Shown here: positions 8,201 to 64,000 of the stretch, one piece after another
Position numbering within the stretch: the first letter of the stretch is position 1
How the letters are laid out: each line of letters starts with the position of its first letter
Assembly: GCA_965637545.1 (NCBI GenBank)
Contig: OZ281496.1
Span: forward strand, 4,464,001-4,528,000
Source of the DNA: Phallusia mammillata
Lineage: Eukaryota
DNA length: 64,000 nucleotides
Direction of reading: 5' to 3'
The notes under the pieces: generated by a model
The model's input: only the letters and a program-made list of their open reading frames with translations
Databases searched by the model: none
What the model was told of the DNA's origin: nothing
Made by a program: the position numbers and the translations under genes

Positions 8201-9185
8201 GCACTGCACACTGTGTGTCCGAAACTAAAAAAGTAAAACAGTATAACAAGCTTATGCTCCCTTACATCCTGTATCACGTTTGGCATGATGGCGTCTTTCG
8301 CCCAATTTGGTTGGTTAAGCCAGTATATTCCAAAGCTTTCAATTTATGAAAATATGTATCTTTTAATGTCGGCAAATATAACGCAAAATCTCTCATTGTG
8401 TCGTATGGCAAGCTATTGTTATGTGACACAAAGGGTTTATGGGATGCTACTTGGTTGGTGTACTGCGGCCCGGTTGTCACAATTTGTTAAAGAATAGTAT
8501 ACAACATAGCACAAAAAAACATAAAATGTTTATGTACCAATATTTTCGTTACAAATTTGTGACGTAACAGTAACTCGTATGCCCTTCCTTGCAGTATCGA
8601 ATCATTTGCCATGTGGTGTTAGTTTTAGATTGATTTTAGAGATGTTAGCGTGGATCTTTATATTGTTATTGAAAATCTATATCAAGTTGAAAACGATGCT
8701 TTGCACGACTTCTCCTAACCACAACCAATATTTTCATGGATACGAACGTATTAGCAAAGAAAGTACTTTTTTGCATTAATACCAATGTAGAAAATATTTA
8801 AACAAATACTAAACAAAATATCATAAATGTGGTGCCTGAATTTTTGTGCCAGTGCTAAAACAGTGATTTCCAACCTTTATCGCTTTTCCCTTTAAGTCAC
8901 CTTTGGGACCCGTAGACCCATTAAGTAACCATCAAAATCCGTAGTCCTATTTTTGTAGCATTAGGATCTGTGATACTTGCAACACATTCTCAATTTCTTT
9001 TGGATGATGTTTCTAGTGAGTCTATACCTGTGGTCCTCAAGAAAACAGCACTATAAAGTTTAATCTTATTTATTATACATACCACTCAAGTTGAAATCAC
9101 AAATAAAATCACAAAGTCACTAACCTCGGTGCAGCGTACTGAGCGTGCTGACAAAAAGCGCCGCTTTTAATAGTCGACTTGTCAT
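2208..9185 (-). CDS. CUB-like + CUB + ZP domain single-pass membrane protein (CUZD1-type architecture), copy A, intact, about 575-581 aa
   Basis: 13 phase-compatible GT-AG exons: 9185-9125 (signal MTSRLLKAALFVSTLSTLHR), 8224-8058, 7922-7772, 7450-7275 (CUB: SPMFPGNYPNLAGCIW..FDTETNYDILY), 6880-6742, 6241-6196, 5496-5331, 5166-5009 (ZP-N, four Cys), 4318-4147, 4020-3950 (LEACWAT), 3845-3656 (FKLMSFVW..IYIHCDVTVC, ZP-C), 2968-2866 (or 2884; KKRRS furin site), 2353-2208 (TM, stop). No internal stops seen. Orthology to CUZD1 not established. Confidence 0.9.
5542..5932. mobile_element. MITE with about 125-bp imperfect terminal inverted repeats
   Basis: Left gacaggtgacactaaaacgctgaatgggcg is inverted at the right end (cgcccattcagcgttttagtgtcacccgtt). 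Flanked by TA. The paralogous intron of copy D (about 59300, agtctagacaac) is the empty site. Confidence 0.8.
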
Positions 9186-9194
9186 TTTTCCCTT

Positions 9195-9978
9195 TGAAAA
9201 TAATAAACAATAATACCACTGACTGCCTAAAATCTGAAGACCCTACAACAAACATTTCATATTTGGGTATAGTGGCACTTAGGTTGGAAACATGAAACTT
9301 CTCAATATTTCCTGACATTTATTTACCAAGCGCCAAGCTTGCGACGCGGGCCAATGACGACTGAATTACAGCTCAAATACAAGAGGAAGCAATCAAACTG
9401 GTAAATTGACGTTCGGTCAACCTGCCAGAGACTTTCCCAGCACAAGCAGACATTTTGGTCATTTACAACGCCACCGAAATACCATTTCATTCAGGTAAAA
9501 ATATTAAAAAACGGTACAATTGTAAGCGAAATTAGTTAGGTGAACCAGGATTTGGCCTAGGAATTTAGGGAAAGGCGAGGTGGTTAACTTTCACTGAACA
9601 AAGCAAGCTTACCCAACCCAATCCCCTATTATAGCGGATCACCGCCCTTAACTTTCTAGATTTCCCCTGCACTTACGGCTGACTGCTAAAGACAAAGGTG
9701 TAATGTTCACACTGAACAACTAATGTAAGTTTAATATAAATAATAAATATAAAATTGAAAGAACGTTGGCTATCTCCAAAGTTTCAATAAGTTACAACAC
9801 AACACCGTCATGCTTTGCAGCTGCAATGCGAACGCTCTAAACACCACAAGGCCCAGGCAAGAACTGCCCTAAGTATAGCACACAATATGGCAGGTCAAAA
9901 GTAACATGATCTTTCCGGCCAATCACAAACGTGCAGGCGCGACTCGTCGACGTCAAAATCACTGGTGCGAGAGAGTAG
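9195..9978 (+). pseudogene. Decayed ORF of unknown family, head-to-head with the CUB-ZP start codon (copies at 10567-11647 and 63011 to window end)
   Basis: Differences between copies are often synonymous in one + frame (tcc/tct, ttc/ttt, gaa/gag, caa/cag, aag/aaa). Peptides TLGYSGTPVGHLKLLNI, AQIQEEAIKLVN, LPETFPAQADILVIYNATEIP, ARWLTFTEQSKL, GPGKNCPKYST. All copies carry stops or frameshifts. Confidence 0.5.
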
Positions 9979-10492
9979 TTAATTAAGTAAACAAAAGTAG
10001 TTTTGGGAAAAGTTAAATATAGACAAAGTGTGCTTGTAGACAAAGTAAAAACAAATTAAATATTATGTAGTGAAACGTTGTTAAATATAAACAAAAAGTA
10101 TGAGGGAAATGTTTGTTAGTTCATGAAATGATTTTCCATTTCAATTTAATCTTCCATTAACGTGTTTCCACCGGCCAAAAGTTTATTATTCTTTGATCCA
10201 ATCTCATACGGAACTTATTGTTGTATGTCGCACGTCAGTATTAGTTTGTTTGTTGTTACTTACTCAAAAAATAACCGTTTGTTGTTAATACTAGAACAGT
10301 GATTTCCAAACTTTTATATCGCTTTCTCCTTTAAGTCACCCTCGGGACCCGTAGCCACCTTTAAGTAACCATCAAAACCCGTAGTCCGATTTTTGTAACA
10401 TTAGGGTCTGTAATATTTGCAACGCAAACTCAATGTTTTTGTACTATGTTTCTAGTGAGCCTACGCCCGTGGTCCTCTATAAAGTCACTAAC

Positions 10493-10552
10493 CTCGGTGG
10501 AACATACTCAGCGTGCTGACAAAAGAGCCGCTTTTATAAGTTGACTTGACAT
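10493..10552 (-). pseudogene. Duplicated signal-peptide exon with 1-nt deletion
   Basis: 60 nt versus 61 nt at 9125-9185. Reads MSSQLIKAALLSAR* and keeps the g|gttagt donor. Confidence 0.75.
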
Positions 10553-10666
10553 TTTTACCTTGGAAAATGATAAAGAGTAATGTCATTAACTACCTAAAAT
10601 CCGCAAAACATATCACATTAGGGTATGGCGGCACTCCTGTTGGAAACCTGAATCTTCTCAATATTG

Positions 10667-10994
10667 TAAAAGAATCGAGCCATTAAATGATAAGCTGCCG
10701 ATAGTACACTCTGTTTCGACCTATAAGGTCTTATCAGTGCAGCTGGTGACGAGCGATCGGCTGCATTGCCTAGTGTAGCCATTTAACGGACCTTGGGAGG
10801 AACAGGGCAAAAACCTGGAAGCAATAGGGTAAAATCCCATGCCTCACCTAGTCTATGTGATGCCACAACTGGGCATACACCACAGAGGAAACTGGCTCAC
10901 AATGGCCAAGCAACTGCTTGGGAACCAAAGCGAAGTCGGCTCAGTGTCACAGTATCAATGTAAAAGCATCGAGCCTTTAAATGATAAGCTGCAG
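10667..10994 (-). mobile_element. Retrozyme-like non-autonomous retroelement (294-nt monomer + 34-nt terminal redundancy)
   Basis: TSD cttctcaatattg at 10654-10666 and 10995-11007. Empty sites at about 9300 and about 63112. Terminal repeats 10667-10700 and 10961-10994 match at 31 of 34 nt. Contains a hammerhead layout. Confidence 0.75.
10693..10744 (-). ncRNA. Type I hammerhead ribozyme motif (degenerate copy)
   Basis: Minus strand AGCTGCA-CTGATAA-GACC TTATA GGTC-GAA-ACAG AGTGTA CTAT-C-GGCAGCT = stem I, core, stem II, GAAA, stem III, cleavage nt, stem I'. Lesions: G8>A, one stem III mismatch, one stem I mismatch. Confidence 0.7.
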
Positions 10995-13900
10995 CTTCTC
11001 AATATTGCCTGACATTTCTATTTGCGAAGCGACGCCAATGACGACACAATTGCAGCTCAACAACAAGAGGAAGCAATCAAACTGGTGAATTGACGTTCGG
11101 CCGAACCTGCCAGAGACTTTTCCAGCACAACCAGACACTTTGGTCATCTACAACGCCTCCGAGATACCATTAGATTCATGTGACACTATTAAAAATCGGA
11201 TAATTGTGACCGAAATTAGCCAGTTGATCCAAGATTTCGCTTAGGATTTTATGAATAGGCGAGGTGGTTAACTTTCACTGAACAGAGTAAGCTTAACCAA
11301 CCATATCCACGAATATAGTAGGCCCTGGATTTCTCCTGCACTGAAGGCTTACTGCTAAAGACAAAGGTGTAATGTTCACACCGAACAACTAAAACAGGTT
11401 TAATATGAATAATAAATATGGAATGGCAAGAACATTGGCCATCTCTGAAGTTTTAATAAGTTACAACACAACCCGACCACGTTTTGTAACTACAATGCAA
11501 ACGCTCCAAACCCCATGAGGCCCAGGCAAGAACTGCCCTAAATATAGCACGAATTATGGCAGACCAAAAGTCACATAACATCAGCGGCCAATTACAAATG
11601 TGCAGGCGCGACACGCCGATGTCAAAATCATTGGTGCGTGACAGTAGGTAATAAATATGGCAAACAAGCGGTACGTTTTAAAAGTGGCATTATAAAAAAT
11701 AAGGTGTAACCCAAATTATTAAAAAATCAAAGTGAAATATAAACATATGTGTTTCCACTGTTCAAAACATTTAATGGATAAAAATGTAAAAATAGATAAG
11801 ACCAACCAAATCTAAACCGTTAAAATACCAGTCTAATAGAGCAACGAAACTCATTTGGATTTTCTTTCAAACATAAATATGTAAAATGTGTATTTGTTTG
11901 TGAAGATTTGATTCAACAGATTATACATGTTTGTCGTAGGTTGGTTTGTATCCGAAACTAAATGTAACGTTGGAAACAATCAATACACTAGGTGGAGGCA
12001 TTAAGTTAAAAATAAAATCGTATTCAGTCACCATAAGAAACAATCCCAACTTGCAAACCAAATCCACCACAAATAAGCTTGTTAAGCATATTTCCTCTCG
12101 ACATCCAAAAACTTGTTTAATACTTAACCAGTAAATGTTTTGACCATAAAACTTTATTCTGGCTGTGACTGCCATTTCTAAACTTCCATTCTAGTTTTAC
12201 TTAGTGGTTCCTATGAATCATGCAAATGTAGCAACTATTAAAAAACAGCAATTTGCTTATAATGTTACAAACTTCGTAGTAGTTCCTCTCACAATTTAAT
12301 TAAGAGATACATGCTACTCTAAAATGGCTAATTGAAACGTGAAAAGCAAAAATGTGACTTTGGTGGCCATATAACCAATACGCACACAGTATCAATTGCA
12401 TCCGATTATATTGTTTTTCAGTCATAGAAACATAAACACTTCGACAAGGTATTTTTTCAGACAACAATAGTAAATATAAGCAGTAAATATTCCATGTACT
12501 GTAATGACTAGCTTTGAACCCTCTAGTTTGAAATCTAAGTTTAGTTGTTGTTTGGGGGAAAATTGTAAGAGTTTTTATGTCGTCAGAAACAGTACAATGT
12601 TATCTGTGAAAAGTTATTGCGAAATGTTATCTACAGACTACTTTGTTTAGATTTTGGATCTTGGGCAATTATGCCCCATACGAGGTAACCGGCTGCAAAA
12701 ATTACAGCAGCCAGAAGAACAAACATCCCAAGTTGGAAGATGTTATAAGCTGCTTCATTAGCTTCATTAGCTTCATTTCTGTCTCCTAGAGTGTCTGCAG
12801 AAAAAGAAGGTTTAACTTAGATAAACATATGTGCATGCGAAAGCATTTGTTACGGGAACTAGAGCTTAACACTTCATGCAGACTAAAAATAATACTATTC
12901 TTATATATACATCGAACGAGACCAAGAAACTTAATGCCGAGTCAAGCTGATTATCAATGCATTTCAGTGCGACCAGAAGTCGTAGATTAAACATTCAGTT
13001 GATGGTGGGATTCGAACCCATCGCATACCATTATTCAGTACTAAGTATTTCGTTTTTAAAGTAACTTTTTTGTTTTCTGGTCAACTCAAGGCCGAGAATG
13101 TTTCCTATATAAAACTTCAAAAAAGCGATGCATAAGTTAGCCAAGTTGGCCGAGTGGTTTAGTACAACCGACTTGTGTTCAATAGTTTGTGAGTTCTAAT
13201 GACTATTAGTTAACGCATTTAGGCGTTGCCGGCCCATCGAGGATGAAATTAAAACAAACAAACAAATTCACTGTCATAGAAACAGGAGAAATATTTAATA
13301 ATTGAGGCCTAATATAGCTGTAGTAAATATGTCCCCAATGGTTTTAGTTGATAAATACAACAATTTGATAACTTGAAACATAGGCAACTGCAGTAATTTG
13401 TCCTGAACTAAGTTAATATGTAGAAGAGTTTAATTATTGTGTTGGTACCTTGCATAAGCAAATACTTGGTAGTTTGTAAGATGTGCACTGGCCCTGCAGA
13501 AACTCGATGGCTGCGTCCATTGTTGTCAACAGATCGTCTTTTTTTCCCACCACACATCTGCAAATCAGTATAATATTTATAATTTTTTTATGTATATAAG
13601 TATTATTAAGGATAAATAAAGCAGCTAAATGTAATCTGAAAAAACTCAAACATCTTGTTTTTTCTATGTTCATTTCAATTAAAGCAAACTTATTGACAAA
13701 TAAGTAAATCAAATATAATCCACTTTACTTGCAATGATGTAAGCAGCTGGACGAAGTACTTATTATGAGCATAACACAACAAACAAACTCAACTCACCTG
13801 TCCAGGACATTGTCCAGTTGAGTTTTGACAGATGGTCACGTCGCAGTGGATGTAGATAAATTGTTCTGCGTCGGTAAAGTTTGTCCACACAAAGCTCATC

Positions 13901-16781: not shown

Positions 16782-17535
16782 ACGCTTCAGGGCTGATCCC
16801 AGTTATGAATTTATGTTCATCTTAACTGATACTGGTCAATCTGGCGATCCCCTACTACGAAGCTGGCATGTGCAGCATACGAGGCAGGCAACGGTGCTTG
16901 TGATTCGACGTTCGGCGGATTCTCCACTGGGCCTGTGTAGCTCAGTTGGTAGAGCGCGAGTCCCGGAAAGACTCCTGTCGTGGGTTCGAATCCCACCGCA
17001 GGCTAGATTTTTCTAGCCTACGCCTTGCCATATGGTGGTGAATGCTTGGTGACCGGGTGATTCGGTATAGCGCCTTCAATGGGCCTGGCGTACTGTGATT
17101 TATATATGAGTGTGCCGTGATCGCTGGTCTGCATAGACGCTTCAGGGCTGATCCCAGTTATGAATTTATGTTCATCTTAACTGATACTGGTCAATCTGGC
17201 GATCCCCTACTACGAAGCTGACATGTGCAGCATACGAGGCAGGCAACGGTGCTTGTGATTCGACTTTCGGCGGATTCTCCACTGGGCCTGTTTAGCTCAG
17301 TTGGTAGAGCGCGAGTCCCGGAAAGACTCCTGTCGTGGGTTCGAATCCCACCGCAGGCTAGATTTTTCTAGCCTACGCCTTGCCATATGGTGGTGAATGC
17401 TTGGTGACCGGCTGATTCGGTATAGCGCCTTCAATGGGCCTGGCGTACTGTGATTTATACATGAGTGTGCCGTGATGGCTGGTCTGCATAGACGCTTCAG
17501 GGCTGATCCCAGTTATGAATTGATGTTCATCTTAG
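16782..17535 (+). repeat. Tandem array of a 355-bp unit containing a tRNA-like cloverleaf (2 full units + about 45 bp)
   Basis: acgcttcagggctgatccc starts at 16782, 17137 and 17492 (period 355). Units are nearly identical. Confidence 0.95.
16931..17004 (+). pseudogene. tRNA-like sequence (second copy 17286-17359), atypical, nominal anticodon GGA
   Basis: Acceptor GCCTGTG/CGCAGGC, D arm GCTC/GAGC, anticodon arm GAGTC-CCGGAAA-GACTC, T arm GTGGG-TTCGAAT-CCCAC. One extra nt before the anticodon stem, C instead of U33, and a short variable loop that does not fit Ser. Confidence 0.7.
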
Positions 17536-25306: not shown

Positions 25307-25441
25307 NNNNNNNNNNNNNNNNNNNNNNNNNNNNNNNNNNNNNNNNNNNNNNNNNNNNNNNNNNNNNNNNNNNNNNNNNNNNNNNNNNNNNNNNNNNNNN
25401 NNNNNNNNNNNNNNNNNNNNNNNNNNNNNNNNNNNNNNNNN
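25307..25441. other. Assembly gap (135 N), flanked on the right by a GTGA/GTGC simple repeat
   Basis: Run of n characters. ORFs spanning it are artefacts. Confidence 1.
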
Positions 25442-29962: not shown

Positions 29963-30150
29963 CATTAAACATAAGCTGCAGACAGTGCACCTATACGGTA
30001 TCATTAGTGCAGCTGGTGACGAGAGATCGGTCGTATTGGCTGGTGTAGCTATCCAACGACACTTTAGTTTGTTGGGAGACCTTATAGGTTAAAACAGTGT
30101 GCTGTGTCGGCAGCTTATCATTTATTGGCTGGATGCTTTTACTTTGAATT
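29963..30150. mobile_element. Rearranged copy of the retrozyme-like family (direct part plus inverted part)
   Basis: 29963-30060 matches 10681-10790 in the same orientation. 30078-30150 is the inverted counterpart of the hammerhead 3' half and of the 10955-10994 terminal repeat. Confidence 0.7.
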
Positions 30151-30997
30151 AAACATGTTTTTCACAATTCTTAGAAATATCTGGTCTTGTTTAACATTTA
30201 ATAATAATTCAAAACGAAACATAACTATAACAGTCCTGTTTTTTCCTTGCATTCCAATTTTAACCATTATAGGTAATTCCCCCAAACATCTTTGATTATA
30301 AACGTTTTTCGACACTTGGATTTGAAGTTGCGATAGTCTATCAAAATATGTAAACTTGCTTTGTAAAAACTACATTGTACATATGCTGATCAGCTTTTTG
30401 CATTTTAATCTTGATTACGAAGCATACAACGCAGTTCTTACAACATTCAAGTTACACAACAAATAAAATAATCACATTAAATAAAACACATCAAGCTAAG
30501 TTACAAATAAATGAATGTTTTTTAACTGTGGTTGCGCAACAAATACTTAGCATTCTGTTTCAAATAAACTGGCAGTTTACGGTTTAAACTTTATGGCATT
30601 AATACAAACATAACAATATGATTAGATATGCTATTCCATCAAAGAATTCGACATGTTACAAACGACTACCATTTTCGAATTGTTCACAGTAAGCAAAGAA
30701 TTATTTCGTCAATTGTAAGAAGTTAAGATAAATTCATAAACGGTATCAGCGCTGAAGCGTCCATGCACACCAACCATCAAGGCGAATATATACATAAATC
30801 AAAGTACGCCAGGCACAAACTTTGAGTACAATGCATTTAAATTTCAAGTCTCAAAATGCTCAAATAGTTAACACTTTATCGAAAACATTTGTAAATCGTA
30901 AGAAAATCAGATAAAAGCTATCATGATTAATCCCTCAAAAAATGCAACGATTTTAAAGCAAAATATCGTATACGTTTTTGTGTTCAAGGATGAAACT

Positions 30998-33900
30998 TTA
31001 TCCAAGCACTTCAATTACTCTGTCGCCTTCCTGAACGGCACCAGCATTGTAGGTCACAGTCAATTCCGTTGGGGGACTTGTAATTGCCCCGATAGAAGAT
31101 ACATTTTGTCTCACATATTTTTTGGCCCTAGTAAGTTGATCTTCTATTGCTTTTGAGTAAAGCAATGGATTGAGAGCGCTGTTGATTGGAAGCAACAGAC
31201 AAGCACTCAACACATAAGCATCTGGTGGCATCTTGATTCCTCCAATACTCAAATATCCCAAGACGCAAATCGGAATCCAGCAACAGAAGTCGGTCAGAAT
31301 CAACCTCGAGATTCTCTTCTGCATCTTGGAGCTGACGTCATTGCTTCTGGCTTCTTTCATCCGATTGCTTTGTTTGTAGATGAGAATATATCCAACCACC
31401 ATGTAGATGAACATAAGAAAGTTGATTGTGATGAGGAAAGTTGAATATTCCCAAGCAAATTCACTGGTTGTGGCGAACAAACGTGGCATACATACGCTTG
31501 TTTCTCCATAATATCCAAACTCCCCCTTGATTGGGTTGCGGGGAAATGTTTCCTTAATTGTTTGTTTCACTTGGTCCCAACTCTCCGGTTCTCTACTGGT
31601 AATTCTTTGTGCAAGAAGTGATATGTTTTCCCTGGAAACAAAGTCATTTCCGAAAATGTTGTTTGGAAACCAGATATCAGTTGTAAAATATTCTGAATTG
31701 ACTTGAAGTAAGGGAATGATTGCCAAAACCGCAGCTGAAATCCAGCAAAACAATTCAGTAAGTAAAACTTTAAGAGCACCCATATTTCGAATTGTAAACG
31801 GTTTGAAGGCTGATGCAAGGCGAAAGGTTGTCATGGCCGTCATCGTAAACGCTGAAGCCTCTGAGGAAATAATTGCAAGTGCTCCAAGTCCTGAACACAA
31901 ACTATTTGATCTCCATTGCTTATCAAATAGACAATACGAGCCCGAAAATTGTGTGGCTTGCACTATAACTGCAAGCAGATAAATTCCCATGAGGAAATCT
32001 GAGCAACAGAGGTTAAGAATAAAAATACTGGTGTTAATAAAAACATGTTTGTTCCTGTCTACATTCCATAAGCTGTAGGCAGTTGCAATGAACACAAACA
32101 AATTTCCACCCAAGGCTAACACAGCTGTTATCCAAAAAATTGCTCTGTAAATTGAATTAGCAATCATTTCGTTGACATCTGCAAATGCGTCTCCAGCCAA
32201 GTTTACACATTCGTCACTTCCGTCTGAACAATCGCGAATTCCATTCTGCACCAGTTTCCATTCAACCGACAAAGGTTGTTTATTTGTGCAATAAAACCTC
32301 ACTTTTTCACAACGGCATCTGCTTTCATCAGATTCATTGTCACAATCGATAATTCCATCACAAAGAGTTTTTCTGTCAATGGAAATCTTATTTTTGCTTT
32401 TGCAATAAAAGCGAACATTGTGACAAAGTCCTGAAAATTCATCTGAACTATCATCGCAATCAATTTTTCCGTCGCAAGCCTGCGAGATGTCTATGCTGAT
32501 TTTTTCTTTGGATAAACAATAAAATCTGTTTGGGCAATTCACTTCCCCAAACACCCCAAGCTTATCCACTATTCCATCGCATATTGAGTTAAACAAAAGG
32601 TCAAATTCATCGCCCTTTTTGAACCAATACTGAAACCAATACCTTAATGGTGGGTTGTCAGTTTTTGCACACCTAAACACTTCGTCAAGTCTAAGGTGTT
32701 TGGTGTATTCTGGCAAACACTGAGTTTGTTTCAAGTTATTAGTAACCGAGCAGTATTTCGTGTTCATTTGGTTAACACATTGCACACTTGAATTGCACAA
32801 CTTTCCACTTTGATCCGAACAAACAGATTTATTTTGACAATGCATCTGATTTGACGGACAAGAACCCCTTATATCTTTACACAAACTTTGATTCAAACAT
32901 AAACACTCATCAGACATATCAAAACAATCCACGATACCGTCACAAACTTGCTTTGGTGATATGATTAACTTTTTATCCAGGCACTGAAAACATTTAAACT
33001 GTCCGTTGACGAAACAAAGATCATACCTATCAGAACATTGAGCCACTGAATCGTAAACGTTAACTTGAGGCAAAACGCAAACACCTTGTCTCGATGATCC
33101 AGAGCATTTAAATCCAAATCCTGAGTTGATTTCATCGCTTTTGTCACTGCAACTACTAACTCTGTCACAGAAGTTGTTACCAGCTATTATTTCTTCATTT
33201 TCACAAATAAAAACCTTCTGGCAAAATTTATTTTTCCTTTCGTTGCAGTTTGATGAGACACAAATCACATTCTTGTTTTCACAACGGTCGATGTCATCAA
33301 CACACGACGGTTGGATTACCGTGTTGCACTCTTGTGGGACTGGAGAATGTACAAGATACCTGACAAGCTGCTCACTCTTACAAGTAGTGGCAAACATTGT
33401 GCAAGATTGACATGTAAAGTTTGTGATTGAACACAGTTCGTCACTTCCATCAAAGCAATCCTTAAATCCATCACCAATCCAGTTTACAGGTAAACATCTG
33501 CCAGTAGATGTGCGAAGTTGGTTACCAGGATCGCGCGGACATCTTGCGTGAACTCCAGAGCAGTTGCATGTGTAATGTGTCTCATCACTACCATCAAAAC
33601 AGTCACCATTTCCATTACATAACAAAGATCGGTCAATACAACTACCCTTTGTTCCGATGCATTGCTTCGTGGCAACACATGCACATTGAAACTTTTCGGC
33701 GGGGCAGGTGCAATTAACTTCATCACTCCGATCTCCACAGTCATTACCTCCATCACATTGATATTTTTTGTCGATGCAACCATGATTAGTTGTGCAGTTC
33801 TTTGTTTTGTAACAATCACATTCAAAACTATCAGCTGGACAAGTGCAATTAACTTCATCACTCCAATCTCCACAGTCTTTATCTCCATCACATTGATATT

Positions 33901-35086
33901 TTTTGTAGATGCAACCATTATTAGTTGTGCAGTTCTTTGTTTTGTAACAATCACATTCAAACGTATCAGCTGGGCAAGTGCAATTAACTTCATCACTCCA
34001 ATCTCCACAGTCATTCCGCCCATTGCATTGCCATTTGTTTTTTATGCAACCACCATTTAAAGTTGTGCAGTTCCTTGTTTTGTAACAGGGGCATTCAAAC
34101 GTATCAGCTGGGCAAGTGCAATTAACTTCATCACCCCAATCTCCACAGTCATTAATTCCATTACAATGCCATTTGTTTTTTATGCAACCACCGTTTACAG
34201 TTGTGCAGTTCTTTGTTTTGTAACAGGGGCATTCAAACGTATCAGCTGGGCAAGTGCAATTAACTTCATCACCCCAATCTCCACAGAGATTTCTTCCATC
34301 GCAAACGTAATCAATTTCGATGCAACCATGACCTTCTGTACAATTGTTAGTTTTGAAACAACCACATTCAAACTTATGAGCTGGACAAGAGCAATTAACT
34401 TCATCACTGCCATCTATACATTCTGTGTTTCCATTACATTGCACTGCCCAATATGGCCCACACCCAATTACACCTTTACAAGATGTGTTGAAGCAGTCAC
34501 ACTGAAACCTGCCTTCAGGACAATAATCACCAAACTCATCACTCCAATCACCACACTGGTTATTCCAGTTGTTTACCCACCACATCTCAATGCATCCTGG
34601 TTTGTCCCCACACCTACCAAACTTGTGACATGTACATTCGAACATTGAAGAAGGGCAGGTGCAGTTGGGACCACTATACGGTTCCTCGCAAACCGAGAGA
34701 TTTTTTGGTTCTGGGAATAAAATAAGCTTTGAATAAATAGTAATAATACTAATCAAAGGAAAAGAAGTAAAGCAGAAATGGAAATGTGTTTTGGCCCGAT
34801 TAATAAGTTCTCAGTAGGTAATGAATATATTCATATGTATTTATAGTTTGCAAAATGATGAAAAACACGTACATTTGTTTTCATTGTATAAATGGTGTCG
34901 TTTTTTCGTGTAATAGATTTCAGTTTTTGTTCGAACCGCGATATTAAAGACTAAAGCCTAACATTGAAGGTGTATCAAATAAAATGATTTCTTACTTGTA
35001 TAAGGTCGTGGAGCGAGACTGAGATCCTCACCCGGACATTCACCTTCCACGCATCCGACGAAAAACAATAGAAACAATAACCACAT
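30998..35086 (-). CDS. LDL-receptor class A repeat-containing rhodopsin-class GPCR (LGR/GRL101/RXFP-type 7TM, no LRRs), about 1267 aa
   Basis: Exon 1 35086-34996 (signal MWLLFLLFFVGCVEG, a|gtaaga phase 1). Exon 2 34710-30998 (3713 nt, open). About 15 LDLa-like modules (C.G..DC.D.SDE), then 7TM with LALGGNLFV, LILTDFCCWIPI and LLPINSALNPLLY. Confidence 0.95.
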
Positions 35087-43078: not shown

Positions 43079-43995
43079 AAAACAAATGTTACATGCAGTA
43101 GATTAGACGTAGTAGATTTAGATTGTCTTTTTCAAAAGAAAAAGTCCACATGCTAACTAACTATTACGGTGCCATCCAAAGTACATTCTTTGCCGTAGAT
43201 AAAAGGGGACGTTTTTTGGCTTTCGCTATTGACGGCCGCATCACAGGTCTATGTTTCAATAACGGCCGACAATGTGTTCAGGGTTGCCAGGTTGGCCCGT
43301 TTCCGGCCAGAATCGACCTTTTTGGTCTTATTCCAGAGGTCTTGGCCGAAAAAATGATTATGTGTACAATAAGAGTAAATAAAAAAACAGCACTTAAACG
43401 CGTATGTCTGCTGGGCCTCTAATGTAAAAATCCTGTTCTAAACTCATACAATCCAAGATTGATGTTTCAACTTCGAATATCTGCATTCAAACTGAATAGC
43501 ATTTCTGTGTAATTGTTAGACAGCACAAAATAATCGAAAAACTTTTATATAATTTTGTTCCACACATCTTTTAAACAGAACAGACACACTTTAGGTAAGG
43601 CAAAAAATAATATCAAAGTATGTACCACTTTAAAATAGTTTGCGTGGTAACACGAATAACATTATTTAATGAAGATTGGTTTATATAGGTGGGCAAAAAA
43701 TTGGTTAAGCTATTTGTTTGGCAAAGATTTTGCAAAAGCTTGCTAAAACAATGCATTTATAAGCTCATTAAAGTACCTAATTAACCATTTTAGTGAAAAA
43801 TATATGTAACAAATGCTATGGTTGATTGTGACTGGCTTTTGAACATACAAGGCATACCAAAATTTAAATTTTAAATATACGAAGCCTAAAAACCATAAAG
43901 TTAAGAGGTTATGTAAAAATCACATAAAGGAACTATTTCAAAACATTACTGTACATGATAGAAAGATAACATCTTTAAATAGGTCAAACACATTA

Positions 43996-44583
<588 letters not shown>

Positions 44584-45452: not shown

Positions 45453-48400
45453 TGTAGTGTTTTATAATGTGCCGGTTACCATCGTGTGTCGTCTGTTGCA
45501 TGAACCGTTGTGTGCATTGTTATTCTACCTAGCGTGTGCTGCGTATTGGACAGTAACATAAAAAATCTGGTATAATCCCGCAAAGCGTGAGTGAGACGCT
45601 ATATTTGGCGACGAGGATCTGTTTTACATTTGTTTTATCAACATTTGGGTTGATTGTGGATCTTCCTGAAGGTAATGGAAGGAAATCCTGACCTCGTGGG
45701 AATGTCAAACAGTGATGTCGGTGCACCGAAACCATTTGATGTTCAAGACGGTGCACATGGTTTATCTCAACGCTGGAAACGTTGGAAACGAGCTTTCAAT
45801 CTATTCTTGGTGGGAAAGGGAATCACGAGTAGCGTTCAGAAAATGGCACTGTTGCTACATACTGCAGGTATGAATGTGCAGGAAATTTACTATACACTAG
45901 TAAACGAGGAAGATGACAACAAGACCTATGATGAAACTTTAACTGTTTTCAATGAGTATTTTATACCAAAGTGCAACATACCTTTTGAAAGACATTTGTT
46001 TCGTCAATTGCATCAAACAAATGACGAATCAGTTGATCAGTTTGTATGTCGATTAAGACAAAGTGCAGCTACTTGCAATTTCGGAAATGAAGCAGATGAC
46101 CAAATTCGTGATCAAGTAATTGTCTGGATATGCGACAGGCTAATACAGCTATCGTGAGGGAAAGACATCCAATACCCACAGTGGAAGAGTTGCTTTATGA
46201 GCTTAACGGAAGTACTGTTTTCAGTAAATTGGACTTAAAGTGGGGATTTCATCAAATTTTACTTGATAAACACAGCAGGCATATCACTACATTTAACACA
46301 CACAAGGGATTGTACAGGTATACTAGACTAATGTTTGGTCTAAACTCTGCCCCAGAGAAATACCAGAAGATTATATGGGATGTTTTGAAAGGATGTCAAG
46401 GAACTGCAAACATTGCAGATGATGTGATTGTACATGGGCGTACAAGGAAAGAGCATGATCAGAGGTTGTTTGCTGTGTTGGATAAAATGTCTCAGTGTGC
46501 TCTGACACTGAATGCTAAAAAGTGCAAATTTCGTATGGCTAAACTTACCTTTTTTGGACATGATTTGAGCAAGCAAGGGATTAATCCAAGTGAAGAGAAA
46601 ATAGCAGCAATCCAGTGAAGCAAGATCTTTTATGGGATTGGTGCAGTATTCTGCAAGGTTTATTCCCAATTTGTCTTCAATTGCAAGACCCATTTTGGAT
46701 TTAACAAAGAAAACTGTCAAGTTTACATGGGGCAAGGCCCAGGACATTGCATTTGTAAGACTGAAGGATTTAATTGTGAAAGCAGATACACTTGCCTATT
46801 TTCGTAATGACTGCACAACAAGAGTAATCGCAGATGCTTCTCCATACGGATTGGGTGCAGTTCTGACTCAGTGGCAATGTGGTCAATGGAGAGTTATATC
46901 TTATGCATCAAGGCGTCTTACTGATGTTGAAAGAAGATACAGCCAAACAGAACGAGAGGCATTGGCTCTAGTTTGGGCTTGTGAGAGGTTTAATTTGTAC
47001 CTGTTTGGAAAGAAGTTTGAATTAGAGACTGACCATAAACCACTTCAGTTTATTTACTCAAAGTCATCTAAACCTCCAGCACGTATTGAACGTTGGGTGC
47101 TGAGACTGCAAGGGTAAGATTTTAAAGTTGTTTACAGACCAGGCAAAACTAATATTGCCGATGCATTGTCAAGACTTAATTTAGCATGCTGTATTGACAA
47201 CAGTGTTTCTGAGGACTTCATTGGTCAAGTTGTGGAATACAGTACACCTGTTGCTATGTCATCAAAAGAAGTGGAAAGAGAATCTGAAAATGATGAAGAA
47301 CTAAGAATGGTCAGACATTGTGTGAAAACAGGTGATTGGTCAAAATGTGTGAATCCAAGCTACCTACATGTGAAAAATGAACTCAGTATATATGGAAACC
47401 TGATACTTAGAGGCACTCGACTTGTAATTCCGGGTAGTTTGCGCCAAGCTGTGTTGAAACTTGCTCATGAGGGACACCAGGGTATTGTGAAAACAAAGAA
47501 CAGGCTTCGTTGTAAAGTTTGGTGGCCAAAGATGGATAGAGATGCAGAAACCCTGTGTAAGAGGTGTCATGGATGCCAAGTAACCAGTGAGTACAGCAGG
47601 CCAGAACCAATTGCAAGAGTTCTACCTCCAAGTCAACCATGGCAGGATTGTGCAGCTGATATACTGGGACCTTTACCAAGTGGAGACAACATATTGGTGT
47701 TGGTGGATTACTATAGCAGGTTCTATGAAGTAGTAATTATGAGGTCAATTACAAGTTCCTGTGTAATACAAACGCTAAGCAAAATATTTGCACGATTTGG
47801 TATGCCTTACTCACTTCAGACTGATAATGGTCCACAGTTCATTTCTAAAGAATTTGAAGATTTTTTGAATGAAAATGGTGTTGAACATGTTCATACAACT
47901 CCACTTTGGCCTCAAGCTAATGGGGAAGTGGAGAGACAGAACAGAACTCTAATGAAGGCAATCCGTGTGGCTCATTTAGAACACAAAGATTGGAAGGCTG
48001 AGATTAACAAATTTTTAATGGCGTACAGATCAACACCACAGTCAACAACTGGAGCTTCTCCATATTATTTAATGTTTGGTCGTGAAATGCGAACAAAGCT
48101 TCCGGAGCTTTGTCAAGAACCAAATGTGACTGAAGAAGAGTTTCATGACAGAGACTGGAGCAACAAGTTGAAAGGAAAACTATACACTGATGAGAAAAGA
48201 AGAGCAATTTCCTCCGGAATAAAAGTTGGTGATCAAGTTTTGGTGAAGCAGCCCAAAACCAACAAGCTTTCTACAAATTTTGATCCGGAACCTAAAAAAG
48301 TTGTCGGTGAAGAAAGTGGTGAAATTACAATTCAGAACAAGGAGGGGGTGGAAATGAAAAGAAATTCATCATTTCTGCGAAAGTATGTCAATGACGAAAG

Positions 48401-48762
48401 TATATCAGAGGATGTTCCCCATGTACCACCATTGGTCGATGTGGAAGCCTCATCCCCAAATTCTGATGTGACAAATGGAACGCGAAGTCGCTCTGGACGA
48501 CAAATTATAACGCCAATGTGGTTTCGTGATTTTGTGTAGCATTGTTATGCACATGTGTTTTAATTTCGTTGTTGTGATGTTTAAAGTAAAAAGGGAGGGA
48601 TGTAGTGTTTTATAATGTGCCGGTTACCATCGTGTGTCGACTGTTGATTTAACCGTTGTGTGCATTGTTATTCTACCCAGCGTGTGCTGATGGTGTGCTG
48701 CGTATTGGACAGCAACATAATAAATCTGGTATAATCCCGCAAAGCGTGAGTGAGACGCTACA
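45453..48762 (+). mobile_element. Ty3/Gypsy LTR retrotransposon (Mag-like), internally deleted and defective
   Basis: LTRs 45453-45603 and 48601-48762 (TG..TA/CA), TSD AATAA, PBS TGGCGACGAGGAT, PPT aaagtaaaaagggaggga. Gag N-terminus about 45675-46115 is fused to RT (IADD). Stops at 46616-46618 and 47115-47117. RNase H, then integrase (H-H-C-C, GPQF, NGEVER). Confidence 0.97.
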
Positions 48763-55369: not shown

Positions 55370-58300
55370 CTACTGGCGAATCCGTCTCGCATTGCGATCG
55401 TGGGTCACTTTGCCCCATACGATATAACCAGCTCCGATAATAATTACAGCCAGAAGAACAAACATCACAAGTTGGTAGCTGTTGCCGGCTCCTTCAATAG
55501 CTTCGCTTCTTTCTCCTGTTGTATATGAGATAAAATGTCATGCTTAACAAAAATAGACAAAAATAGGTAAATAGATGCTTATTTATTGATGTAGTCAGCA
55601 CTAAAACGGGCATGTGCTGGTTATAATCATAAAATTCACAGTGTACGTCAAGATTGCAAGTGGCCACCGAATCAGTCTGGTTGTTAAAGCAACGGATACA
55701 AGAAAAAGAAAATTAGAGATGGGATTCGAACCCAAGGAATATGTTTTTAGGTAATTGTTTTTTTTTATGAACCTTTTATATGTTCTCTAATGCAAGTCAA
55801 AGTCTGTTTTTAAACAAGTCATGGAAATTTAATAAAAGGTGCGATTGTTACCGGTCAAGTTAATCACATATACATCTACGTAAGTAACCACCAAGACACA
55901 GTATATAAAATCGAGAAAAAAGCTTAAGTTATTATGACCCCAAGTTGTGAAAACTTAAGTTATTATGCCCCAAGAGGTGTGACTTGCTGGCTAGAACTAC
56001 AAATTTCCTTAGCAAAAGCACGTGTATCAGCAATATTATCTAGAATAGAGATTAATTTTTTCTTATTGTTCTACCAAGCAGGAAAGCGGTATCTTGAACG
56101 ATGTGCACTGGCCCTGCAGAAAGCCGTTGATTGCGACCATTGTCTTCAACAGATCGCCGTTTCTTACCAGAACAGGACTGCAAAAACAATTTTACTAATA
56201 TTACTATTTAACGGCAATCCATTCCTATTAAGGCGTCATACCGAATCAAGGCGATCACGGCACACATATATATAAACCATAGTGCGTCAGGCCGATTAAA
56301 GGGCGGTCTCCCAAGCATTGCTACACTGCACGGCGTATTTTCCGTGCTATTACTCTATCAGCTGAACCAAACAAGAGGGTTTAAATACTCTTTAGTTTGT
56401 GTGTATGCTACGGACAGTAAACATCGTTATTTTCCATGAGGTTCGGACCCAAGACGGGGGGATAGGTGCCGAATCCCGATGAAGTTTTTGTAGGTCTTGA
56501 TGTAGGTCTGGCGCGCCGGACCATTCGGCCATTGTACTGGTTTGCCATATAAAATCGCATGAGTGCAGCTTGTGACAGGAAGTATACCGTACTGACAAGC
56601 GAACCTAGGACACTCCAGTTTGTTGTGTGCAACAGACTATTAGCCGCGCCTCACTAAAACTTTTCAATGAACGCCAAGAAAAAATCTTTAGTTTATCTAG
56701 ACACATACTGTTTCGAGTTTTTGTGAGCAATACTCCGCAATTGTGTTCAGATAAAACAAATATCCTCGATCTTTCTATAGTTTTCGACGAACACTACTTT
56801 TATATATATATATATCACAAGTCCAAAATGCACTTAATTCAACTCACCTGTCCAGGGCATTGTCCAGTTGAATTTTGACAGACGGTCACGTCGCAGTGGA
56901 TGTAGATAAATTGATCTGCGTCGGTAAAGTTTGTCCACACAAAGCTCATCACCTTGAAAGTTGCAAAGTTGGATCGGTAATTGCGCATCATCATCTTTGC
57001 GTCGGCAGTCTCGCCCCCACTGGGTGGCGCAACGCACCTAATAATTTCAATGCTAAGTTACACAGAGTGAAATTGCGCAGGAACTTGGCCGAATGGTCCA
57101 GCTCGCCTGACCCATTTACAGCCATAAAAAGGCAGAGTGAAATTCAGATGGAAAATTAATTACTGAACAAACAAGCTCCCGATTAAGAAAATAATATGTT
57201 GAGGTAATGCAACTATATCTTACCCGCTTTGTACAATTTGGTAACTAGGCAAACTATCGGAGTTTTCATTGCGTGTCGCCCAACAGGCTTCCAGCTGTGC
57301 AAAAAGATGTTCCACTTTAAGAGTATAAATTACAAATTAGACCAAAGATGCCAGAATAGTGAAGATTAAATCAAAGAATGCAATGTTTTCTTGCACTAAA
57401 AGCTGTTTGTTTTCATCACCTGGACAATAAAGTCATTGTTGTTTGTAGAAATCTCATCAAGTTTAAGTTTAGCAAAAATGTAGTTAGGTACAGTTACTTC
57501 TCTGGGCAAGCTTTCGGTATATAATTTGTTGCTAAAGAGATTTAGGGCAACATCCAAAGTTCCTGTTTTCTTCGCCGAAATTTCTTCAGATCTACAATAT
57601 TTAAAAATTTTCGGAAATAAAAATGGCAATCAATATGACAAATAGCTTACTATCTTTAACGCCCTGGTGTGTACGCGAGATTATCAAATACAAATTAACG
57701 CACTACATTAAAACCGTGCATTTTGTTGAGCAGCATTGGTAAATACACTCTCCACAATATTATGGCCTTGTCTAAATAGAATTGTGCAATTTTAAACGGT
57801 TGGATAAATTGCCACCTGAAATGGCTACAATTAAGGTACCGGACAACAACCGAATCATGCAAGGAGAAATAAACTGTGCTGCGTGTGATACACAGTGCGG
57901 CAAGTGCTGTTGAGTGTCTTGTGTCATCATGATGTATAATTATGCCTTATTTTTTGTCAAATGTGTCATGCATGCCAGGTGTCTTGTGCCATGGGCAGAT
58001 TGATGAGTTCTGTGTCGTGTGGAATGTGTACAGCTGTATGTCATTCATGGTGTGGTTGGTTGGATGTTTTGTGACATGTGCAACATTTCTTTTTCCGTTC
58101 GTCAAATTGTTTTAAAGTGATGTCAACCAAAGACTGTGTAACGTATTATCACGCCTACTGTGTGTTTTGTACATGTTGTCTTGTACCGAGTGCCACAGCT
58201 GTTATATCATTCATAGTACCCCGGGCCTATTCGAATCAGTTGGTATCCCAAGCATTCCCACAAGGCAAACCTCAGGTTAGAAAAATATAGCCTGCGGTGG

Positions 58301-62996: not shown

Positions 62997-64000
62997 TTTT
63001 ACCTTGGAAAATGATGAACAGTAATAACACTAACTACCTAAAATCTGCGCCTCCTGCAAAAAAACTTGCCACATTAGGGTATAGCGGCACTCCGGTTGGA
63101 CACCTGAAACTTCTTAATATTGCCTGATATTTATTTATTAAGCGCCGATTTGCGACGCGACGCCAATGAAGACAGAATTACAGCTCAAATACAAGAGGAA
63201 GCAATCAAACTGGTGAATTGACGTTCGGTCGAACCTGCCAGAGACTTTTCCAGCCCAAGCAGACATTTTGGTCCATTCACAACGCCACCGAGATACCATT
63301 TGATCTAGGTACGTCACAATCAGTGATTTACTGCAACACAATGCGTGTGTTCTAAAACTTTCCAGTATGCTACAGAGTCTTAAGGCATGTACCTTTGCAC
63401 AACCGATGAACATTTCAAAGCCTGTTTTAATGTTTTAACTCATACGTAACCCACTTGCCTCGCAACATACAACCTGTAAATCTGCTGCAAAATATGTCTC
63501 TGCTTTAACTGGAATGGAACTGTAAGCCCGCGATGTGACAGTCTATAACAGGGCTTGTCAAACTGTGGGTCGCGAAATATAATTTTGGGGTATCGAAACA
63601 TCCTGAGTTCTTATGTCATTTGTCATTGTCTACAACGCCACCAAGATACCATTGGATTCAGGTAAAAATATTAAAAATTCAATCTTACATGTTGCTGTAG
63701 AAATCAATCTTACATGTTGCTGTAGAAAATTTTTAGTAAAGCAACTTTTTTTTCCGAAAACAATAAGTTTCCCACTAGTGAAAAATTGGTATAATTGTAA
63801 CTATATTTGCAACGAAATTAGTGAGGTGAAATCGGATTCGGCTTAAGATTTTAGGAAAAGACGAGGTAGTTAACTTTCACTGAACAAAGTAAGCATACCC
63901 AACACTATCCACTATTATAGCGGATCACCGCCCTTAACTTACTACATTTCCCATGCACTGACGTCTTACTGCTAAAGACAAAGGTGTAATGTTCACACCG

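What the first reader, a model, noticed from the sequence alone, without database searches (positions are those of the whole stretch)
10654..11007. Retrozyme-like insertion: hammerhead-bearing 294-nt monomer whose end coincides with the predicted self-cleavage site
Seen: a 328-bp insert with a perfect 13-bp TSD and empty paralogous sites (about 9300, about 63112). It equals one 294-nt monomer plus a 34-nt terminal redundancy and contains a full type I hammerhead layout on the minus strand (10744-10693). The insert's 5' end in ribozyme sense (10994, C-TGCAGCT) starts within 1 nt of the C17 cleavage position. Combining the partial copies in this window gives the consensus AGCTGCA CTGATGA GACC TTATA GGTC GAA ACAG..CTGT C TGCAGCT with all three stems paired. 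Established: metazoan non-LTR retrozymes are short non-coding tandem monomers with type I hammerheads that give circular RNAs and are thought to be mobilised by Penelope-like elements. Inference: this copy was reverse-transcribed from a self-cleaved or circular RNA, reading slightly more than one round. I do not know whether such a family has been described in this lineage.
Basis: partly seen in the sequence, partly recalled or inferred. Interest (0 to 1): 0.85.

Follow-up and report, generated by a model that had tools for sequence, protein, structure and literature searches.

The report
Dead hammerhead retrozyme insertion, Penelope-type
The 328-bp insert is a real but mutated copy of a small non-coding jumping element that carries a self-cutting hammerhead ribozyme; hundreds of copies with an unmutated ribozyme sequence lie elsewhere in this genome, and the element belongs to a kind already described in other animals (retrozymes tied to Penelope-like retrotransposons).

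Summary
A 328-bp insert (10667-10994) has a perfect 13-bp target-site duplication and two empty paralogous sites. It is one 294-nt unit plus a 33-34-nt repeat of its start. Its 5' end in ribozyme sense lies at the predicted cleavage site.

The family monomer is 282 nt. The 294-nt form exists only here and in a 99.94% identical segmental duplicate. This copy's ribozyme has five changes, including core G8 to A.

A sample of 77 insertion units shows Penelope-type hallmarks:
- 12-13-bp duplications
- frequent 5' truncation
- partial tandems
- head-to-head inverted arms
- 3' ends at only two places, +2 to +9 and +33 to +38 past the cleavage site

The "34-nt redundancy" is therefore the family's standard tail, not an accidental over-run of a circle. 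5' ends at the cleavage site recur but are a minority (8 of 96 arms against 3.2 expected), and 118 of 126 sites were read through.

It is a new member of a known kind (metazoan non-LTR retrozymes). Earlier notes of this scan found the same family elsewhere in this genome, which they call the ascidian Phallusia mammillata; I did not test that name. Circular RNA is untested.

The parts
10654..10666 (.). Left copy of the 13-bp target-site duplication CTTCTCAATATTG
   Evidence: Exact match to 10995-11007. Single copy at the empty paralogous sites.
10667..10994 (-). Whole 328-bp insertion, ribozyme sense on the minus strand. One decayed copy of the hammerhead retrozyme family.
   Evidence: 84% identical to the main 282-nt family. 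Absent from the paralogous sites.
10667..10699 (-). 33-nt 3' tail: a repeat of the unit's first bases, ending ...CTTTTA
   Evidence: Matches 10961-10993 with 3 mismatches when the C is included. It ends at the same position as the family's long-class 3' ends, +33 to +38.
10700..10993 (-). 294-nt unit from the first base after the predicted cleavage site to C17
   Evidence: Alignment to the 282-nt family monomer. The extra length lies in a private replaced segment found nowhere else in the genome except the segmental duplicate.
10693..10744 (-). Decayed type I hammerhead. Helix I 10744-10738 / 10699-10693; core CTGATAA 10737-10731; helix II with loop 10730-10718; GAA 10717-15; helix III with loop 10714-10701; C17 at 10700.
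   Evidence: Read directly. 5 of 52 differences from the family ribozyme, including G8 to A. No Rfam hit.
10994..10994 (-). 5'-terminal base of the insert in ribozyme sense: a C at the C17 position, directly before TGCAGCT
   Evidence: Read directly. The same C-TGCAGCT start is seen in L006 and L045. L009 and L020 start at T1.1.
10995..11007 (.). Right copy of the 13-bp target-site duplication
9298..9310 (.). Empty paralogous target site (CTTCTCAATATTT)
63110..63122 (.). Empty paralogous target site (CTTCTTAATATTG)
29973..30147 (.). Second, older unit of the same family. Two head-to-head inverted 5'-truncated arms: minus arm about 29973-30078 with a short 3' end (+8), plus arm about 30076-30147 with the long tail. 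Flanked by a 9-bp repeat ATTAAACAT (29964-29972, 30148-30156). Both hammerheads are decayed.

Best explanation
The insert is one old retrotransposed copy of a small (282-nt monomer) non-coding element. The element's only conserved functional module is a canonical type I hammerhead ribozyme, so it is a metazoan non-LTR retrozyme. It was most likely copied into the chromosome by the reverse transcriptase and endonuclease of a Penelope-like element.

Shown:
- The copy is a true insertion: 13-bp duplication and empty paralogues.
- The family is dispersed and abundant, and makes 12-13-bp duplications.
- Insertions show the Penelope-type pattern: 5' truncation, partial tandems, an adjacent inverted 5'-truncated arm, and a 30-40-nt tail at one end only.

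Inferred:
- Reverse transcription of this copy started at the family's fixed long 3' position, about 35 nt past a hammerhead. It ran back through one whole unit and stopped where the RNA ended or the enzyme fell off, at the next hammerhead's cleavage site.
- That fits a template RNA whose 5' end had been made by self-cleavage of a multimeric transcript, while the downstream ribozyme stayed uncut.

The copy has since lost its ribozyme (G8 to A and broken helix pairs). It was later duplicated with its surroundings, so it is a fossil and not a source element.
For: Insertion:
- Duplication and empty sites.

Family ribozyme:
- 399 exact 27-nt cores, 229 exact and 659 near-exact 52-nt hammerheads, none for the reversed control.
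- All core bases are present, three helices form in the minimum-energy fold, and Hammerhead_1 matches over the full model at E = 0.003.
- The hammerhead is kept almost unchanged in a subfamily that is only 72-77% identical overall.

Family insertions:
- 32 of 77 units have exact flanking repeats of 11-17 bp. 26 of these are 12 or 13 bp. Random controls almost never reach 10 bp.
- 3' ends fall at +2 to +9 or +33 to +38. 21 of 22 two-arm units have one of each.
- The window copy's tail ends at the long-class position.

Penelope-like elements and literature:
- Penelope-like copies with GIY-YIG and a minimal hammerhead exist, some 99.9% identical to each other, and also occur head to head.
- Published Penelope features are the same: 5' truncation, partial tandems, an inverted 5'-truncated copy, and a 30-40-bp tail at one end (PMC8557442).
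- Retrozymes with type I hammerheads co-occur with such elements (PMC7229834; bioRxiv 10.64898/2026.07.22.740005).

5' ends:
- Other copies also start at the cleavage site: L006, L009, L020, L022, L045.
Against: - No autonomous partner was identified. The retrozyme shares no detectable sequence with the Penelope-like 3' ends sampled, and I could not measure their duplication length.
- The ribozyme's activity is predicted only, and the Rfam score is below threshold.
- The excess of 5' ends at the cleavage site is small and absent in the unbiased sample. This copy's 5' end could be chance, or a stop at the ribozyme's structure.
- The copy is 16% diverged from the main family yet has a perfect duplication. 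Its source was therefore probably a divergent lineage whose ribozyme state is unknown.
- Expression evidence is weak: contigs of runs only guessed to be RNA.
Confidence: 0.82

Rival explanations
1. The copy was reverse-transcribed from a circular 294-nt RNA by rolling-circle reading of slightly more than one round, so the redundancy measures the over-run.
For: - Unit plus terminal redundancy, with the 5' end at the cleavage site.
- Retrozyme RNAs are circular in other animals (PMC7229834).
- The main monomer folds stably: -102.5 kcal/mol, z = -3.3.
Against: - The redundancy has the same fixed end as about half of all arms in the family, including arms of 40-130 nt that never completed a round.
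- A circle has no 5' end at which to stop at the cleavage site.
- The two redundant ends differ at 3 of 34 positions.
- Multi-unit arms are explained equally well by multimeric linear transcripts.
- No circular RNA could be tested.
Confidence: 0.15
2. The 5' end at the cleavage site is a coincidence or a structure-induced stop of reverse transcription, not the end of a self-cleaved RNA.
For: - 118 of 126 cleavage sites were read through.
- In the unbiased sample, ends at the site match expectation (3 against 2.5).
- A much stronger 5'-end hot spot lies at a hairpin at monomer positions 195-210 (23 of 96 arms). This shows that structure, not RNA ends, shapes most 5' ends.
- Further 5' ends cluster inside helix III at positions 268-276.

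Against: - Over all arms the site is enriched about 2.5-fold (p about 0.02).
- Several copies start at exactly C17 or T1.1, and in L009 and L045 both arms do.
Confidence: 0.4
3. It is a LINE-dependent SINE or a DNA-level repeat (satellite fragment or foldback DNA transposon), and the hammerhead is incidental.
For: - 12-13-bp duplications also fit LINE-type insertion.
- Inverted arms could be mistaken for terminal inverted repeats.
Against: - No A-rich or microsatellite tail and no tRNA, 5S or 7SL head.
- Arm lengths and junctions vary from copy to copy with fixed 3' ends, which is the signature of 5' truncation rather than of terminal repeats.
- Copies are dispersed, with duplications and empty sites.
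- The hammerhead is the best-conserved part across subfamilies.
Confidence: 0.04

Closest known systems
Metazoan non-LTR retrozymes (Cervera and de la Pena 2020, PMC7229834)
   Same: - Non-coding unit of about 300 nt with one canonical type I hammerhead of a single polarity.
- GC below 50%.
- Strongly self-paired RNA.
- Duplications longer than 4 bp.
- Host genome also holds Penelope-like elements with minimal hammerheads.
   Different: - In this sample the family is mostly dispersed, 5'-truncated single or head-to-head insertions, with at most 3-4 tandem units seen. Long tandem arrays were not seen.
- Circular RNA is not shown.
- The host is a tunicate according to earlier scan notes. I found no paper describing retrozymes in tunicates.
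Penelope-like element insertions (Craig et al. 2021, PMC8557442; Cervera and de la Pena 2014, PMC4209133)
   Same: - High 5' truncation and partial tandems.
- Adjacent inverted 5'-truncated copy.
- 30-40-bp tail at one end only.
- Hammerhead near the 3' end.
   Different: - No ORF.
- The hammerhead is canonical (4-bp helix III with a 6-nt loop), not the minimal 1-2-bp helix III form carried by this genome's Penelope-like copies.
- No shared sequence with the sampled Penelope-like 3' ends.
Schistosoma Sm-alpha and newt satellite 2 hammerhead repeats
   Same: - Short dispersed or tandem non-coding repeats with a type I hammerhead.
- The Rfam Hammerhead_1 consensus aligns over its full length.
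   Different: - Unrelated sequence outside the core.
- The comparison rests on my own knowledge of those families plus the Rfam alignment, not on a direct alignment here.
Plant LTR retrozymes (PMC4918200)
   Same: Non-autonomous, hammerhead-bearing, and thought to move through RNA.
   Different: Plant retrozymes have type III hammerheads inside LTRs, a primer-binding site and polypurine tract, and 4-bp duplications. None of these is present here.

Membership tests
Hammerhead ribozyme, type I | Conserved core CUGANGA ... GAAA with a cleavable H17 | tested here: met
   Family copies read CUGAUGA ... GAA-A ... C17. The window copy itself fails this feature: it reads CUGAUAA, G8 to A.
Hammerhead ribozyme, type I | Three helices around the core, with helix I open (5' and 3' ends in helix I) | tested here: met
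   Helix I 7 bp, helix II 4 bp with a 5-nt loop, helix III 4 bp with a 6-nt loop. The minimum-energy fold gives exactly this junction. No variation in the helices, so there is no covariation evidence.
Hammerhead ribozyme, type I | Score at or above Rfam RF00163 gathering threshold (34 bits) | tested here: not met
   22.8 bits, E = 0.003, on an unmutated family copy. No hit on the window copy or at gathering level in 16 loci. The long helix III loop costs score.
Hammerhead ribozyme, type I | Self-cleavage activity | not testable with these tools
   Needs in vitro transcription of, for example, L005:1527-1808 (minus strand).
Metazoan non-LTR retrozyme | Short (150-450 nt) non-coding repeat with a type I hammerhead and GC below 50% | tested here: met
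   282-nt monomer, GC 49.6%, longest stop-free stretch 53 codons in a trimer.
Metazoan non-LTR retrozyme | Tandem arrangement (dimers to multimers), so that two ribozymes flank a unit | tested here: inconclusive
   Tandems of up to about 3.6 units exist (L005, L007). Only 2 of 60 unbiased loci hold two complete direct hammerheads. Most copies are truncated single or inverted units.
Metazoan non-LTR retrozyme | Expressed as linear and circular RNA | tested here: inconclusive
   Contigs of runs only guessed to be RNA hold exact pieces of up to 240 nt. Contigs cannot show circles or ends.
Penelope-like-element-dependent insertion | 5' truncation, partial tandems, adjacent inverted 5'-truncated copy, 30-40-bp tail at one end | tested here: met
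   21 of 22 two-arm units with duplications have one short end and one tailed end.
Penelope-like-element-dependent insertion | Sequence shared with the pseudo-LTR or 3' end of an autonomous Penelope-like element of the same genome | tested here: not met
   No similarity between the monomer and seven GIY-YIG loci, L091-L097. Only some Penelope-like families were sampled.
LINE-dependent SINE | Pol III-type head (tRNA, 5S or 7SL) and an A-rich or LINE-like 3' tail | tested here: not met
   No Rfam match in the element. 3' ends are ...TGCAGCT or ...GCTTTTA, with no A-tail.

The most novel reading that the evidence does not exclude
The two staggered nicks of one integration event each prime DNA synthesis at a fixed place just 3' of a hammerhead: +7, the last base of helix I, and about +35. 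This makes one short-ended and one tailed arm on a multimeric or circular RNA. If so, the folded hammerhead would serve as the 3' recognition and start module for the Penelope-type reverse transcriptase rather than, or besides, cutting the RNA. That would explain why hammerheads persist in these elements although most sites are read through uncut.
Probability: 0.2. Interest if true: 0.55.

Novelty: new member of a known kind. Interest (0 to 1): 0.3.

Why it matters
This copy is a textbook-clean insertion of a hammerhead retrozyme: perfect duplication, empty paralogues, and ends that can be placed to the base.

The family gives a quantitative picture of how such elements land:
- 12-13-bp duplications
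- two fixed 3' ends
- one short and one tailed end in each head-to-head unit

That bears on the still unclear integration mechanism of Penelope-like elements and on what their hammerheads are for.

It would also extend retrozymes to tunicates, if the host is the ascidian that earlier notes name. Standard Rfam thresholds miss this family, so such elements are probably under-annotated. The window copy itself is dead and has no expected function.

Tried and rejected
- Rfam at gathering threshold on the window and on 16 family loci found only tRNAs. The hammerhead appears only with the E-value threshold, on an unmutated copy.
- I took a retrozyme-like module near a GIY-YIG ORF (L093/L034) for the 3' end of an autonomous Penelope-like element. 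I rejected this because the near-identical Penelope copy L092 lacks that stretch, so the two are only neighbours.
- Comparing repeated units within an insertion against units between insertions, as a test of rolling-circle copying, was too noisy at the arm ends and I dropped it.
- A circular-fold script timed out. I used linear folds instead.
- Tandem Repeats Finder saw no array around the insert. The host repeat of about 1.34 kb is too diverged or too long for it.
- Reads: only contigs were available, so no RNA ends, strand or circular joints could be read.
- Literature searches for hammerheads or retrozymes in ascidians gave only a count of 9 Rfam type I hits in Didemnum vexillum.
- I did not verify the species name.
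Full report
**1. The observation**

- CTTCTCAATATTG stands at 10654-10666 and again at 10995-11007, with 328 bp between.
- I joined the two flanks with a single copy of that 13-mer. The joined sequence aligns without a break across the junction to two paralogous places in the window: 9113-9986 at 79% and 62924-63304 at 83%. Each carries one copy of the 13-mer, at 9298-9310 and 63110-63122. This is an insertion into one member of an older repeat of about 1.34 kb.
- In ribozyme (minus) sense the insert reads C (10994), a 294-nt unit (10993 to 10700, ending in C17) and 33 nt that repeat the unit's start (10699 to 10667). The two 34-nt redundant ends differ at 3 positions.
- The hammerhead layout at 10744 to 10693 is as stated. 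This copy reads CUGAUAA instead of CUGAUGA (G8 to A). One helix III pair is broken, the helix I base next to the cleavage site is changed, and there are two loop changes, making 5 of 52 differences. Rfam reports nothing here even at E = 10.

**2. The family**

- The insert hits the host assembly widely (240 Mb, 312 contigs): 1,779 first-look candidates, and the 40 that were scored gave 87 matches.
- Apart from one identical copy 132 kb away, all hits are at most 85% identical. That copy lies in a segment 99.94% identical over 3.3 kb, so it is a segmental duplicate and not a second insertion.
- A 71-nt stretch private to the window copy occurs nowhere else. The 294-nt form is therefore a singleton.
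- The dominant family has a 282-nt monomer.
- Counts: 399 exact 27-nt cores, 229 exact 52-nt ribozymes, 659 with up to 3 mismatches, and none for the reversed control.
- Rfam Hammerhead_1 aligns over its whole model with every core base, but scores 22.8 bits against a threshold of 34 (E = 0.003 in a 351-nt search). The minimum-energy fold is the three-way junction.
- A third subfamily is only 72-77% identical overall but keeps the ribozyme almost unchanged, which points to constraint on the ribozyme in source copies. The helices do not vary, so there is no covariation evidence.
- The monomer has 49.6% GC and no ORF. It folds to -102.5 kcal/mol, z = -3.3, and none of 200 shuffles folds as well.

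**3. How copies are inserted**

I mapped 30 loci from the similarity search. I also mapped 60 loci chosen only for holding an exact ribozyme core, which is unbiased with respect to copy ends. All were mapped onto one genomic monomer.

- Shapes: copies are 5'-truncated pieces, partial tandems of up to about 3.6 units, and very often two arms lying head to head.
- Duplications: of 77 units, 32 have exact flanking repeats of 11-17 bp, and 26 of those are 12 or 13 bp. Of 386 random control pairs, only three exceed 9 bp: one of 11 bp and two long matches (32 and 38 bp), which I take to be repeats. The duplications enclose the whole head-to-head unit, so each unit is one event. The window's 13 bp is the family norm.
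- 3' ends: with ends fixed by the duplications, they fall at only two places. One is +2 to +9 after the cleavage site, most often +7, the last base of helix I. The other is +33 to +38 (...GCUUUUA(C)). Of 96 arms, 43 are short-ended and 50 long-ended.
- Polarity: in 21 of 22 two-arm units one end is short and the other long.
- The window copy's tail ends at ...CUUUUA, which is the long class. Its "34-nt redundancy" is the standard tail and also occurs on arms of 40-130 nt.
- The second, older unit in the window (29973-30147) shows the same pattern: a short end on the left, a tail on the right, and a 9-bp flanking repeat.

**4. The 5' end**

- Eight of 96 arms start within 3 nt of the cleavage site, against 3.2 expected from the overall truncation rate (p about 0.02).
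- In the unbiased sample the figures are 3 against 2.5.
- 118 of 126 cleavage sites that the copied strand met were read through.
- Exact starts at C17 or U1.1 occur in L006, L009, L020, L022 and L045. In L009 and L045 both arms start there.
- A much stronger hot spot (23 of 96) lies at a hairpin, TGGCTA-CAC-TAGCCA, at positions 195-210. More ends lie inside helix III.
- The window copy's 5' end therefore belongs to a real but minor class. A self-cleaved template is plausible. My rough estimate is that a bit over half of such ends exceed background. It is not shown. A circle is not required, and a circle has no 5' end at which to stop.

**5. Who moves it**

- The genome holds copies with a GIY-YIG endonuclease ORF (Pfam 28.6 bits) followed by a minimal hammerhead, the Penelope-like signature. 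L092 and L093 are 99.86% identical over 2.1 kb.
- Their 3' end has 765 first-look candidates, and some copies also lie head to head.
- Published descriptions of Penelope-like insertions list the features seen here: 5' truncation, partial tandems, an adjacent inverted 5'-truncated copy, and a 30-40-bp tail at one end (PMC8557442).
- Metazoan retrozymes are described as repeats of about 300 nt with type I hammerheads that co-occur with such elements and probably derive from them (PMC7229834; bioRxiv 10.64898/2026.07.22.740005).
- I found no sequence shared between the retrozyme and the sampled Penelope-like 3' ends. I could not fetch more DNA to measure their duplications. The specific partner is unknown.

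**6. Expression**

Nineteen public runs of one coded organism hold the family. Fourteen are small contig sets that the tool guesses to be RNA. Laid on a trimer locus, three of them give exact pieces of up to 240 nt, and some pieces sit inside longer contigs. Contigs cannot show ends, strand or circles, so this is weak support for transcription and none for circularity.

**7. Age of this copy**

- It differs by 16% from the main family, yet its duplication is perfect and its redundant ends differ by 9%. Much of the difference therefore probably predates insertion, from a divergent source lineage. This is inference.
- Its ribozyme is now inactive by sequence.
- The insertion predates the 132-kb-distant segmental duplication.

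**8. Verdict**

The finding is real, well observed and correctly classed in kind. The mechanism needs correcting: the tail is the fixed family end, and the cleavage-site 5' end is a minority class.

It is a new member of a known kind. Earlier notes of this scan report the same family elsewhere in this genome and name the host Phallusia mammillata. I did not test the name. I found no paper on retrozymes in tunicates.

Noticed in passing
window 8855-12007 and 62629-64000: The insertion sits in a repeat of about 1.34 kb, present in at least three diverged copies (79-83% identical). Two are adjacent, and one lies 52 kb away at the window's end. It has no ORF of 130 aa or more, and its nature is unknown.
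   Followed up: partly
G000:C3:4341227-4344554 (L002), 132 kb upstream of the window site: A segment 99.94% identical over 3.3 kb, including the insertion. This is a recent segmental duplication or an assembly duplicate.
   Followed up: partly
window 30998-34756 (-): Uninterrupted 1,252-aa ORF with eight LDL-receptor class A repeats followed by a rhodopsin-type 7TM domain. It looks like an intronless LDLa-GPCR gene.
   Followed up: partly
window 45654-48539 (+): Broken Ty3/gypsy-type LTR retrotransposon pieces: gag, RNase H, and integrase with its zinc-binding domain.
   Followed up: partly
window 43993-44574 (-): Large exon encoding the C-terminal half of a thiolase.
   Followed up: no
window 16931-17004, 17286-17359 (+) and 58289-58362 (-): Three near-identical tRNA-like sequences with odd anticodon arms. 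Another note of the scan treats 16782-17535 as a 355-bp tRNA-like repeat unit.
   Followed up: no
L092 and L093 (G000:C1:4030545-4033652 and 4270906-4274013): Penelope-like copies 99.86% identical over 2.1 kb, with a 314-codon open frame holding GIY-YIG and a minimal hammerhead about 140 nt past the stop. No RT-length open frame lies upstream in these copies.
   Followed up: partly
L007 (G000:C4:8121886-8125194): A 3.6-unit retrozyme array with an inverted arm lies inside a dense tRNA gene cluster: six tRNA genes in 3.3 kb.
   Followed up: no
family monomer positions 195-210 (for example L039, L046, L052): The hairpin TGGCTA-CAC-TAGCCA is the main 5'-truncation and arm-junction hot spot (23 of 96 arms). 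The CTGCAG palindrome at the cleavage site also forms perfect inverted junctions (L045, L009).
   Followed up: partly
window 25307-25441: A run of 135 N: an assembly gap or masked stretch. I left it as it is.
   Followed up: no
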